From contig NC_088855.1 in the NCBI RefSeq assembly GCF_963853765.1, forward strand, positions 58,094,001-58,158,000: a stretch of 64,000 nt of DNA, given 5' to 3'. Shown one piece after another: positions 12,060 to 12,473 of this stretch. Every line of letters begins with the position of its first letter. Positions within the stretch are counted from its first letter, which is position 1. The notes under the pieces are model-generated. The model saw only the letters and a program-made list of their open reading frames with translations. It had not been told where the DNA came from and ran no database searches. The position numbers and the translations under genes were made by a program. The DNA comes from Magallana gigas (lineage: Eukaryota).

Positions 12060-12137
<78 letters not shown>
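12060..12137. repeat. (TA)n microsatellite
   Basis: About 39 uninterrupted AT units. Confidence 0.98.
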
Positions 12138-12138
<1 letters not shown>

Positions 12139-12186
12139 TTAAATAAATAAAACAGAATGCGACAGTCCAAATTAAATAAATTGTTT

Positions 12187-12225
12187 ACTGTTAGCGCTTT
12201 CAGCCATGTCGGCTCTTCAGACAGT
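12187..12225 (-). ncRNA. Minimal type I hammerhead ribozyme motif (mirror copy)
   Basis: Reverse complement of the motif at 12234-12272. Confidence 0.65.
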
Positions 12226-12233
12226 TTTGTAAA

Positions 12234-12272
12234 ACTGTCTGAAGAGCCGACATGGCTGAAAGCGCTAACAGT
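12234..12272 (+). ncRNA. Minimal type I hammerhead ribozyme motif
   Basis: ACTGT (stem I) - CTGAAGA (core) - GCC gacat GGC (stem II) - T - GAAA - GCGC - TA (palindromic AGCGCT stem III, CUA site) - ACAGT (stem I'). There is one extra U before GAAA relative to the canonical core. Confidence 0.65.
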
Positions 12273-12334
12273 AAACAATTTATTTAATTTGGACTGTCGC
12301 ATTCTGTTTTATTTATTTAAGTATTTTTTGCTGT

Positions 12335-12473
12335 NNNNNNNNNNNNNNNNNNNNNNNNNNNNNNNNNNNNNNNNNNNNNNNNNNNNNNNNNNNNNNNNNN
12401 NNNNNNNNNNNNNNNNNNNNNNNNNNNNNNNNNNNNNNNNNNNNNNNNNNNNNNNNNNNNNNNNNNNNNNNNN
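12335..12473. other. Assembly gap (N run)
   Basis: 139 N bases. Confidence 1.

What the first reader, a model, noticed from the sequence alone, without database searches (positions are those of the whole stretch)
12135..12324. Palindrome made of two back-to-back minimal hammerhead ribozymes
Seen: each 94-bp arm contains ACTGT-CTGAAGA-GCCgacatGGC-T-GAAA-GCGC-TA-ACAGT. The inversion centre sits only ~4 nt 5' of stem I, and the left arm runs into a 39-unit (TA)n tract. Established: Penelope-like elements carry minimal type I hammerheads with a palindromic stem III that cleave as dimers, and often have inverted terminal repeats. Inference: whichever strand is transcribed, the RNA contains one sense ribozyme and its full antisense, so it can either self-cleave or fold into a ~94-bp dsRNA hairpin. 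That would be a built-in cleave-or-silence switch, and it records template switching right next to the ribozyme. The extra U before GAAA is non-canonical.
Basis: partly seen in the sequence, partly recalled or inferred. Interest (0 to 1): 0.72.

Follow-up and report, generated by a model that had tools for sequence, protein, structure and literature searches.

The report
Head-to-head Penelope retrotransposon end stubs
The palindrome is an ordinary insertion scar: two extremely shortened 3' ends of one young Penelope-like retrotransposon, each carrying the element's own small hammerhead motif, joined head-to-head inside a (TA)n microsatellite of an oyster genome.

Summary
Arms 12135-12228 and 12231-12324 are 94 nt long and 100% complementary. 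They abut a (TA)39 tract, and each arm holds a type I hammerhead-like motif with one extra U before GAAA.

Each arm is the last ~90 nt of a young Penelope-like element (RT plus C-terminal GIY-YIG). The genome holds at least 124 copies of its hammerhead core and at least 162 copies of its 3' terminus.

More than half of these 3' ends sit in head-to-head pairs. The 5'-5' junctions lie anywhere from inside the ribozyme to 3.1 kb upstream. The window copy is the short end of that continuum, and its junction position is not special.

One arm of each pair carries a ~33-nt "tail", and both outer flanks are (TA)n. This architecture is already published for these elements.

Eight families in this genome show covarying stems I and II around fixed boxes, so the motif is a genuine PLE hammerhead. 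The extra nucleotide is a lineage trait.

The cleave-or-silence switch is not supported. Each transcript holds one sense ribozyme, made after its antisense, and the hairpin (-157 kcal/mol) dwarfs the ribozyme fold (-9). No RNA reads could be assigned to this locus.

Reads did not independently confirm the local junction. The scan found the same structure before on other pieces of this genome (s1-385405, s1-388606).

The parts
12060..12137 (.). (TA)39 microsatellite. It is the target site and the left outer flank of the insertion.
   Evidence: TRF finds period 2, 39.0 copies, 100% matches. Every copy of the family examined abuts (TA)n on both outer sides.
12138..12228 (-). Left arm: the last ~90 nt of a family-1 Penelope-like element, 5'-truncated. 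It lacks the tail and ends directly in (TA)n.
   Evidence: It is 100% identical to the 3' terminus of at least 50 genomic copies. It aligns to the reference copy from +89 back to about -10 relative to the ribozyme start.
12187..12225 (-). Hammerhead-like motif of the left arm (stem I, CUGAAGA, helix II, U, GAAA, GCGC, UA, stem I). The predicted cut lies 3' of the base at 12192 on the - strand.
   Evidence: Pattern and descriptor hits.
12229..12230 (.). Centre of the palindrome: the 5'-to-5' junction of the two truncated copies. The surrounding 10 nt (12225-12234) differ by one base from the family's sequence upstream of the ribozyme.
   Evidence: Position 12232 reads T in other copies.
12231..12323 (+). 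Right arm: the last ~90 nt of the same element in sense orientation.
12234..12272 (+). Hammerhead-like motif of the right arm. The predicted cut is after 12267.
   Evidence: Cross-family covariation is shown.
12324..12334 (+). Readable start of the one-sided 'tail' extension that follows the 3' end of one arm in every pair. It runs into the N stretch (12335-12473), which was not filled.
   Evidence: The same 11 bases begin a ~33-nt tail in other copies, always on one arm only.
12474..12981 (+). Neighbouring fragment of a second Penelope-like family. It holds a remnant of the C-terminal endonuclease ORF (12534-12692), its own hammerhead-like motif (12920-12956) and its 3' end, then (TA)n at 12982-13000. 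It is context for the finding, not part of the palindrome.
   Evidence: At least 45 genomic matches, also in -/+ pairs. The motif was parsed.

Best explanation
The palindrome is a dead-on-arrival double insertion of a young, transcribed Penelope-like retrotransposon (PLE) into a (TA)n microsatellite.

Shown:
- Each arm is the 3'-terminal ~90 nt of the element. That is its minimal type I hammerhead motif plus 53 nt.
- The arms are joined 5'-to-5', so both 3' ends face outward into (TA)n.
- One arm carries the family's one-sided ~33-nt tail.
- The same head-to-head layout recurs across the genome with arm lengths from about 45 nt to 3.1 kb.

Inferred:
- The GIY-YIG endonuclease nicks both strands of the TA repeat.
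- Reverse transcription is primed from both 3'-OH ends on the 3' region of element RNA.
- The two minus-strand cDNAs stop early and are joined to each other, often at short palindromes or microhomologies.
- A fold-back of a single cDNA is a less likely variant, because only one arm has the tail.

The hammerheads are passengers of the element's 3' end. In this context they cannot fold. If the locus were transcribed it would give a 94-bp hairpin RNA, a possible Dicer substrate, as a by-product rather than a designed switch.
For: - Identity. The arm matches at least 50 loci at 99-100%. The hammerhead core occurs 124 times with at most 3 mismatches, 79 of them exact. The terminal 31-mer occurs 162 times.
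- Element type. [quoted passage not shown] These ORFs diverge outward and end about 170 nt before the hammerhead.
- Architecture. In every pair one outer end abuts (TA)n directly and the other carries the tail and then (TA)n.
- Continuum of junctions. There are 28 pairs among the 100 listed exact 3' ends. The inner distances are 26, 32, 41, 54 (three times), 73, 79, 97, 117, 122 (the window), 129-148, 163-228 and 0.5-5.5 kb.
- Junction sequences. Junctions fall at AGC|GCT (three loci), at the helix II hairpin, at AAAA|TTTT and at AAAAAC|GTTTTT.
- Arm similarity. Arms of a pair are near-identical, for example 0 arm-specific differences over 1,256 nt in L036.
- Other families. The same palindrome type occurs in another PLE family next to (TA)n (L113:380-504). 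Outward-facing -/+ GIY-YIG pairs are common across many families.
- Literature. Inverted 5'-truncated copies, a one-sided 30-40 bp tail, a (TA)n bias (for Naiads) and hammerheads in pseudo-LTRs are described in PMC8557442. Dual minimal hammerheads on opposite strands 100-700 bp apart are noted in PMC4209133.
- Energetics. The full hairpin folds at -157.3 kcal/mol. The ribozyme-containing arm alone folds at -9.2 kcal/mol.
Against: - The local junction is not confirmed by independent reads. No listed contig bridges 12229/12230. The window-specific A at 12232 is absent from run X1 and is at most a minor share of run X3.
- The right flank enters a run of N.
- The formation mechanism (two primed cDNAs joined to each other) is inferred from anatomy only. 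No biochemical model for PLE inversions exists in the literature I could search.
- The asymmetric tail is not explained by a simple symmetric two-priming model.
- Target-site duplications cannot be read inside (TA)n.
Confidence: 0.85

Rival explanations
1. One reading: the palindrome is a built-in cleave-or-silence switch. The transcript would either fold the sense hammerhead and self-cleave, or fold into a ~94-bp dsRNA hairpin that feeds RNA silencing.
For: - The motif has all conserved hammerhead boxes and a palindromic helix III.
- A transcript of the locus would certainly form a long perfect hairpin.
- Inverted Penelope copies give siRNAs in flies (PMC3681739).
Against: - There is only one sense ribozyme per transcript, while this minimal class needs a dimer (PMC4209133).
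- In either transcription direction the antisense arm is made first, so the sense arm zips up as it emerges.
- The hairpin folds at -157 kcal/mol and the ribozyme arm at -9.
- Junctions in sister pairs cut through or remove the ribozyme (D = 26-97), so no selection keeps two intact ribozymes.
- The arms are identical because the insertion is young, which is not conservation.
- All RNA reads carry the letter of other copies at 12232, and there are none on the left flank beyond 11750.
Confidence: 0.03
2. Assembly artefact: a fold-back or chimeric read created a false palindrome at a hard-to-assemble (TA)n repeat next to a gap. The real locus would hold one truncated copy or none.
For: - The palindrome lies between a 78-bp TA repeat and a run of N.
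- No independent contig bridges the centre, and the junction-specific base at 12232 is not seen in run X1.
- PMC8557442 notes that such PLE structures cause assembly problems.
Against: - At least 28 analogous pairs lie on nine of the ten large sequences, each with its own junction and with unique flanks and no N.
- One-sided tails are consistent with biology rather than with read chimeras.
- The same structure occurs in a second family.
- The same architecture is reported from other species (PMC8557442, PMC4209133).
Confidence: 0.07
3. Same identity but a different origin. A single minus-strand cDNA folded back on itself (snap-back) and primed its own copy, instead of two separately primed cDNAs being joined.
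For: - Many short pairs are symmetric, with both arms ending at the same base and with 0-6 nt at the centre.
- In L070 the junction uses the helix II hairpin stem exactly as a self-primed 3' end would.
- Some pairs share a private variant in both arms, for example C6:32137461/32137504 and C3:34348330/34348395.
Against: - Exactly one arm of each pair has the tail. A self-copy of the first cDNA should reproduce the tail on both arms.
- Junctions at 6-nt palindromes without any loop (AGC|GCT) cannot form an intramolecular hairpin, but they fit the annealing of two identical 3' ends.
- Long pairs are strongly asymmetric, for example -2231 against -1538.
Confidence: 0.25
4. A miniature DNA transposon (MITE) with 94-bp terminal inverted repeats, inserted at a TA site.
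For: At first sight it shows a perfect inverted repeat flanked by TA, with many copies at variable spacing.
Against: - The 'repeats' are the 3' end of an RT plus GIY-YIG retroelement.
- The inner boundaries vary from copy to copy.
- The outer ends are asymmetric, with a one-sided tail.
- No transposase lies between long arms.
Confidence: 0.01

Closest known systems
Complex tandem or inverted insertions of endonuclease-positive Penelope-like elements (Evgen'ev & Arkhipova 2005; Arkhipova 2006; Craig et al. 2021, PMC8557442)
   Same: [quoted passage not shown]
- Heavy 5' truncation.
- An inverted 5'-truncated copy adjoining the other copy.
- A one-sided 30-40 bp tail.
- Microsatellite target.
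- Hammerhead in the terminal repeat region.
   Different: - Here both copies are truncated to ~90 nt, so nothing but two ribozyme-bearing ends remains and the result is a perfect palindrome.
- The published (TA)n preference was stated for Naiads, which have an N-terminal endonuclease. This family has the canonical C-terminal endonuclease.
Minimal type I hammerheads of metazoan PLEs (Cervera & de la Pena 2014, PMC4209133)
   Same: - CUGANGA and GAAA boxes.
- G10.1-C11.1 pair.
- Short stem I (5 bp).
- No stable helix III, but a palindromic GCGC that allows dimers.
- Location in the 3' or terminal repeat of a PLE.
- The paper already noted pairs on opposite strands 100-700 bp apart.
   Different: [quoted passage not shown]
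- It has instead an extra U between 11.1 and G12.
- Helix II is only 3 bp, against their 6-8 bp.
- Cleavage is untested.
L1 twin priming (5' inversions of LINE-1)
   Same: The second nicked target strand also primes reverse transcription. This gives head-to-head segments joined at microhomologies.
   Different: In L1 the second primer anneals internally, so the two segments are different parts of one element (an inversion). Here both arms start at the element's 3' end, which gives an inverted duplication.
Inverted-repeat Penelope copies as siRNA sources in Drosophila (PMC3681739)
   Same: Rearranged copies with inverted repeats can give dsRNA and 21-22 nt siRNAs that map to the inverted part.
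   Different: That was shown in flies with long inverted repeats. No small-RNA data were available here, and no RNA could be assigned to this locus.
Animal non-LTR retrozymes (tandem hammerhead repeats, circRNAs)
   Same: A type I hammerhead with a weak helix III, linked to PLEs.
   Different: Retrozymes are direct tandem repeats that place two sense ribozymes on one RNA. Here the repeats are inverted, and no direct tandem of complete ribozymes exists in this family.

Membership tests
Penelope-like element, endonuclease-positive (C-terminal GIY-YIG) | A single ORF with a reverse transcriptase followed by a C-terminal GIY-YIG endonuclease | tested here: met
   Long copies of the same family (L031, 646 aa) hit Pfam RVT_1 (E = 2.8e-08) and GIY-YIG at residues 559-644 (E = 1.8e-07), both above the curated cut-offs. 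The window copy itself is too truncated to hold any ORF.
Penelope-like element, endonuclease-positive (C-terminal GIY-YIG) | 5' truncation with tandem or inverted adjoining copies and a one-sided 30-40 bp tail | tested here: met
   There are 28 head-to-head pairs among 100 listed 3' ends, with a tail on exactly one arm. One locus (L061) has an upstream partial direct copy, which is a pseudo-LTR.
Penelope-like element, endonuclease-positive (C-terminal GIY-YIG) | A hammerhead motif in the terminal repeat or 3' region | tested here: met
   The motif lies about 170 nt after the ORF stop and 53 nt before the 3' end in all copies. Sister families carry one 170-550 nt after the GIY-YIG domain.
Hammerhead ribozyme, type I, minimal PLE class | Conserved core C3U4G5A6N7G8A9 ... 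G12A13A14 ... U16.1 H17 with no insertions | tested here: inconclusive
   All boxes are present, but one U is inserted between C11.1 and G12. An extra nucleotide at this place also occurs in 4 of 7 other PLE families here: U in families 2, E and F, and A in family C. It is absent in A, B and D. The MFE fold pairs it with A9.
Hammerhead ribozyme, type I, minimal PLE class | Stems I and II supported by compensatory changes among relatives | tested here: met
   Eight families have eight different stem I sequences, all paired: three pair types at the first position and five at the second. Helix II is GCC/GGC, GCCC/GGGC, GGAU/AUCC or GGGAC/GUCCC. The descriptor hits 12 times on the sense strand and 0 times on the antisense strand in 12 kb downstream of GIY-YIG.
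Hammerhead ribozyme, type I, minimal PLE class | A palindromic helix III or loop 3 that allows an active dimer | tested here: met
   The sequence is GCGC flanked by A15.1 and U16.1. Cofolding of two arms forms the 6-bp AGCGCU duplex plus both helices II and swapped stems I. Other families have GCGC, CUAG or AU.
Hammerhead ribozyme, type I, minimal PLE class | [quoted passage not shown] | tested here: not met
   A9 is followed directly by G10.1 in family 1. The bulge is present in families C and D.
Hammerhead ribozyme, type I, minimal PLE class | Score above the Rfam gathering threshold (RF00163 and clan) | tested here: not met
   There is no hammerhead hit at the gathering threshold or at E<=10. 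As a control, canonical minimal hammerheads of families A and B are also missed, with the best hit at 18.5 bits and E = 1.9. The test therefore lacks power.
Hammerhead ribozyme, type I, minimal PLE class | Site-specific self-cleavage | not testable with these tools
   This needs in vitro transcription of dimeric constructs. Published PLE minimal hammerheads cleave only weakly even as dimers (PMC4209133).
Retrozyme (non-LTR, animal) | Direct tandem repeats with at least two consecutive complete hammerheads | tested here: not met
   Copies are paired in inverted orientation, not direct. The only upstream direct partial copy (L061) lacks the CUGAAGA half.
MITE / TIR DNA transposon | Fixed terminal inverted repeats with constant inner and outer boundaries, and a transposase-bearing autonomous partner | tested here: not met
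   The inner boundaries vary from +45 to -3122, the outer ends are asymmetric, and the interior encodes RT plus GIY-YIG.

The most novel reading that the evidence does not exclude
The palindromic helix III of the minimal hammerhead may serve mainly to pair two element RNAs, not to cut RNA. The RNA dimer would offer two 3' ends to the two nicked strands of the (TA)n target. Head-to-head double insertions would then be the default outcome (56 of 100 sampled 3' ends). The palindrome in the window would be a footprint of such a dimer-templated event in which both cDNAs stopped just past the ribozyme. Two observations would fit a structural rather than catalytic role. An extra nucleotide next to G12 is retained in 5 of 8 families. 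And this family amplified to more than 160 insertions without any cis tandem of ribozymes.
Probability: 0.08. Interest if true: 0.65.

Novelty: new member of a known kind. Interest (0 to 1): 0.15.

Why it matters
As a discovery it matters little. It is the shortest form of a published insertion architecture, and the proposed riboswitch-like function is not supported.

It has practical value for annotation. Perfect hammerhead palindromes next to (TA)n in bivalve genomes should be read as truncated double insertions of Penelope-like elements, not as new RNA genes, MITEs or microRNA precursors. Rfam's microRNA models score them spuriously.

The family-wide data give raw material for the unsolved integration mechanism of these elements:
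- junctions at short palindromes;
- a tail on one arm only;
- a single locus that keeps the 5' body;
- a lineage-specific extra core nucleotide.

Tried and rejected
- Rfam gave no hammerhead hit at the gathering threshold or at a relaxed threshold. Only generic microRNA-hairpin models matched, and I rejected those as artefacts of any perfect hairpin. The control showed that Rfam is blind to this class.
- My first idea was a MITE or DNA transposon with TIRs at a TA site. I rejected it after finding RT plus GIY-YIG ORFs between long arms.
- I saw an apparent hot spot of junctions 0-18 nt upstream of the ribozyme. I rejected it as ascertainment bias from probing with the ribozyme. With the terminal 31-mer as probe, the junction density simply falls with distance.
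- An apparent recurrent truncation at -33 was an artefact of a 19-nt deletion in the reference copy I had chosen.
- I considered the tail to be the first 33 nt of the next unit (a tandem or circular template). This cannot be decided. Only one locus in the genome continues from the tail into the 5' body, so the tail may equally be the extreme 3' end that the inverted arm lacks.
- MAFFT alignments of the short ribozymes were out of register, so I built no covariance model. I counted covariation from a structural parse in a script instead.
- Reads were only short-read contigs and short RNA reads.
- A genome-wide tail search listed one hit that overlaps the window's N stretch. I did not follow it up or use it to fill the N.

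Full report
**Observation**

The window holds a perfect inverted repeat. The arms are 12135-12228 and 12231-12324, each 94 nt, 100% complementary, with 2 nt between them. The left arm continues into (TA)39 at 12060-12137. The right arm is followed by 11 readable bases and then a run of N from 12335 to 12473. I did not try to fill that run.

Each arm reads ACTGT CTGAAGA GCC GACAT GGC T GAAA GCGC TA ACAGT. This is a type I hammerhead layout:
- stem I of 5 bp;
- helix II of 3 bp with a 5-nt loop;
- a palindromic GCGC in place of a stable helix III;
- one U inserted between C11.1 and G12.

The predicted cut after 12267 is correctly placed.

Rfam does not call a hammerhead at the gathering threshold or at E<=10. 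It reports only microRNA-precursor models, which any perfect hairpin would match.

**What the arms are**

The right arm matches at least 50 places in the window's own genome at 99-100% identity. The genome is 564 Mb in 29 sequences.

Copy counts for the family are:

| Probe | Matches |
|---|---|
| 37-nt hammerhead core, up to 3 mismatches | 124 (79 exact) |
| Terminal 31-mer | 162 |

Copies very often come as a - copy followed by a + copy, at spacings from a few bases to 5.5 kb. In the long pairs (L031, L033) the space between the arms holds two ORFs that run outward, each ending about 170 nt before the hammerhead. The 646-aa ORF of L031 hits Pfam RVT_1 and, at its C-terminus, GIY-YIG.

The arms are therefore the 3' ends of a canonical endonuclease-positive Penelope-like element (PLE). 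Each pair is two 5'-truncated copies joined 5'-to-5'.

**Architecture of the family**

In all pairs examined, one outer end runs straight from the element's last bases into (TA)n. The other outer end carries an extra ~33-nt tail before (TA)n. The tail motif occurs 66 times.

Only one locus in the assembly (L061) continues from the tail into a 5' body. It reads (TA)n, a partial upstream copy that starts inside the ribozyme, the tail, a 3.8-kb unit, the tail again, then (TA)n. That is the classical pseudo-LTR layout. With a single such locus I cannot tell whether the tail is the start of the next unit or the extreme 3' end of the element.

Arms within a pair are nearly identical, for example no arm-specific difference over 1,256 nt in L036 and none in the window. 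Copies are 97-100% alike, so the family is young.

PolyA RNA reads and a 3.6-kb RNA contig cover the 3' end plus tail. These reads carry the letter of other copies at 12232, and their upstream parts match the family's 3' UTR. They therefore show that the family is expressed, not this locus.

**Where the junctions lie**

When I probed with the ribozyme, junctions seemed to pile up 0-18 nt upstream of it. That was ascertainment bias.

The exact terminal 31-mers listed for sequences C1-C9 give an unbiased sample of 28 pairs, which is 56 of the 100 listed ends. D is the distance between the two terminal 31-mers:

| Inner distance D | Where the junction lies | Pairs |
|---|---|---|
| below 117 (26, 32, 41, 54 three times, 73, 79, 97) | inside the ribozyme or the last 53 nt | 9 |
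| 117-149 | 0-18 nt upstream of the ribozyme (window = 122) | 6 |
| 150-230 | further upstream | 3 |
| above 500 | far upstream | 10 |

Junction density falls steadily with distance. The place next to the ribozyme is not special.

The junction sequences are informative:
- Three loci join exactly at the centre of AGC|GCT, the helix III palindrome.
- One locus joins at the helix II hairpin.
- Others join at AAAA|TTTT or AAAAAC|GTTTTT.
- Some have a few filler bases.

The window's centre (12225-12234) equals the family's upstream sequence with one changed base.

**Is the motif a real hammerhead?**

I took 20 regions downstream of GIY-YIG hits from other PLE families in this genome. A simple structural descriptor found 12 motifs on the sense strand and none on the antisense strand in 12 kb. 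Shuffles of the 64-kb window gave 2.15 hits over both strands, or 128 kb.

With the second family in the window (12920-12956) this gives eight families. They share these features:
- fixed CUGA(A/U)GA and GAAA boxes;
- eight different, fully paired stem I sequences;
- four different G-C-containing helices II;
- a palindromic helix III (GCGC, CUAG or AU).

This is good comparative support for a conserved PLE hammerhead.

The closest family by protein is family A, at 56% identity over the C-terminal 330 aa. It has GCC GAUCA GGC followed directly by GAAA, so it lacks the extra U. An extra nucleotide at that position occurs in five of the eight families, so it is a lineage trait and not damage private to this locus.

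Whether it allows catalysis is unknown. The MFE fold pairs it with A9, which would disturb the core. Rfam also fails on the canonical family A and B motifs, so its silence on the window is uninformative.

**The proposed switch**

A transcript in either direction contains the antisense arm first and the sense arm second, because the arms are joined 5'-to-5'. The full hairpin folds at -157.3 kcal/mol. The arm alone folds at -9.2 kcal/mol.

Minimal PLE hammerheads need two sense copies to build helix III, and they cleave poorly even then (PMC4209133). The palindrome offers one. Sister pairs lose part or all of the ribozyme. No RNA was seen on the left flank beyond 11750, and none was specific to the junction.

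I therefore reject the cleave-or-silence switch. Production of dsRNA and siRNA from inverted Penelope copies is a known by-product in flies (PMC3681739). It could apply here only if the locus is transcribed.

**Most likely origin**

This part is inferred from anatomy. The endonuclease nicks both strands of the TA repeat. Both 3'-OH ends prime reverse transcription on the 3' region of element RNA. The two minus-strand cDNAs end early and are joined, often where their ends can pair.

Fold-back of a single cDNA explains the symmetric short pairs and the helix II junction. It does not explain why only one arm has the tail, nor the loop-free joins at 6-nt palindromes. I give the two-primer route about 60% and fold-back about 25%.

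The literature describes the architecture but offers no tested mechanism (PMC8557442).

**Caveats**

The local junction is not confirmed by independent data. The available runs were short-read contigs and short RNA reads, and none bridges the centre.

Against a fold-back artefact stand dozens of analogous pairs elsewhere, each with its own junction, unique flanks and no N. The same structure also occurs in another family at L113:380-504, again beside (TA)n.

**Comparison and verdict**

The structure matches the published description of PLE insertions: an inverted 5'-truncated adjoining copy, a one-sided 30-40 bp tail, a microsatellite target and a hammerhead in the terminal repeat (PMC8557442).

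It is the extreme short form of a known kind, with a lineage-specific core variant. The scan reached the same reading at other loci of this genome (s1-385405, s1-388606).

Interest is low. The residual novel idea, that hammerhead-mediated RNA dimers template the double insertions, is possible but untested.

Noticed in passing
window 12474-13000: Right of the N stretch lies a fragment of a second Penelope-like family. It holds an ORF remnant ending at 12692, its own hammerhead-like motif (AAACUC CUGAUGA UUUAAAAU GAAA CUAG UU GAGUUU) at 12920-12956, 25 more nt, then (TA)n at 12982-13000. One TA microsatellite has therefore been hit by two different PLE families. The second family has at least 45 genomic matches, which also occur in -/+ pairs.
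   Followed up: partly
G000 C7:35748186-35751534; C8:36384098-36389530; C3:57770677-57772377: Families 1 and 2 lie side by side at several other loci as well (coordinates). Either they share (TA)n targets or they insert next to each other.
   Followed up: no
L113:380-504 (G000 C3:39749989-39750113): The same kind of perfect head-to-head hammerhead palindrome occurs in a different PLE family (B). Its centre is CAGTAG T CTACTG. It sits directly after a (TA)n tract that itself follows the 3' end of yet another family (C).
   Followed up: partly
L061 (G000 C2:48626000-48632700): This is the only locus in the assembly where the family-1 tail continues into a 5' body (pattern count 1). Its layout is an upstream partial copy, a 3.8-kb unit, then the tail. 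All other copies seen are 5'-truncated.
   Followed up: partly
L042 (G000 C6:32137348-32137540): Two short hammerhead palindromes lie 113 bp apart. In the second, both arms share the same A-to-G change next to the cleavage site. This looks like a local duplication of a palindrome, or a more complex multi-arm insertion.
   Followed up: no
L031:4830-4890 and window 12805-12865: TGACGTCA-like (CRE/ATF-type) palindromes sit 20-100 nt upstream of the hammerhead in both families. They may be promoter elements of the terminal repeat.
   Followed up: no
window 12153-12306: With relaxed thresholds Rfam scores the palindrome as several microRNA precursors, for example MIR8742 at 70 bits and E about 1e-15. 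These scores are below the gathering thresholds. The hits are generic to a perfect hairpin and are a trap for automatic annotation.
   Followed up: yes
window 12330-12356 (overlaps the N run): A genome-wide search for the tail motif listed a hit whose coordinates overlap the window's N stretch. This suggests the N run is a mask rather than an assembly gap. I did not read it, follow it up or use it.
   Followed up: no
There is no credible helix II. The hit is probably chance, since shuffles give about 2 hits per window.
   Followed up: no
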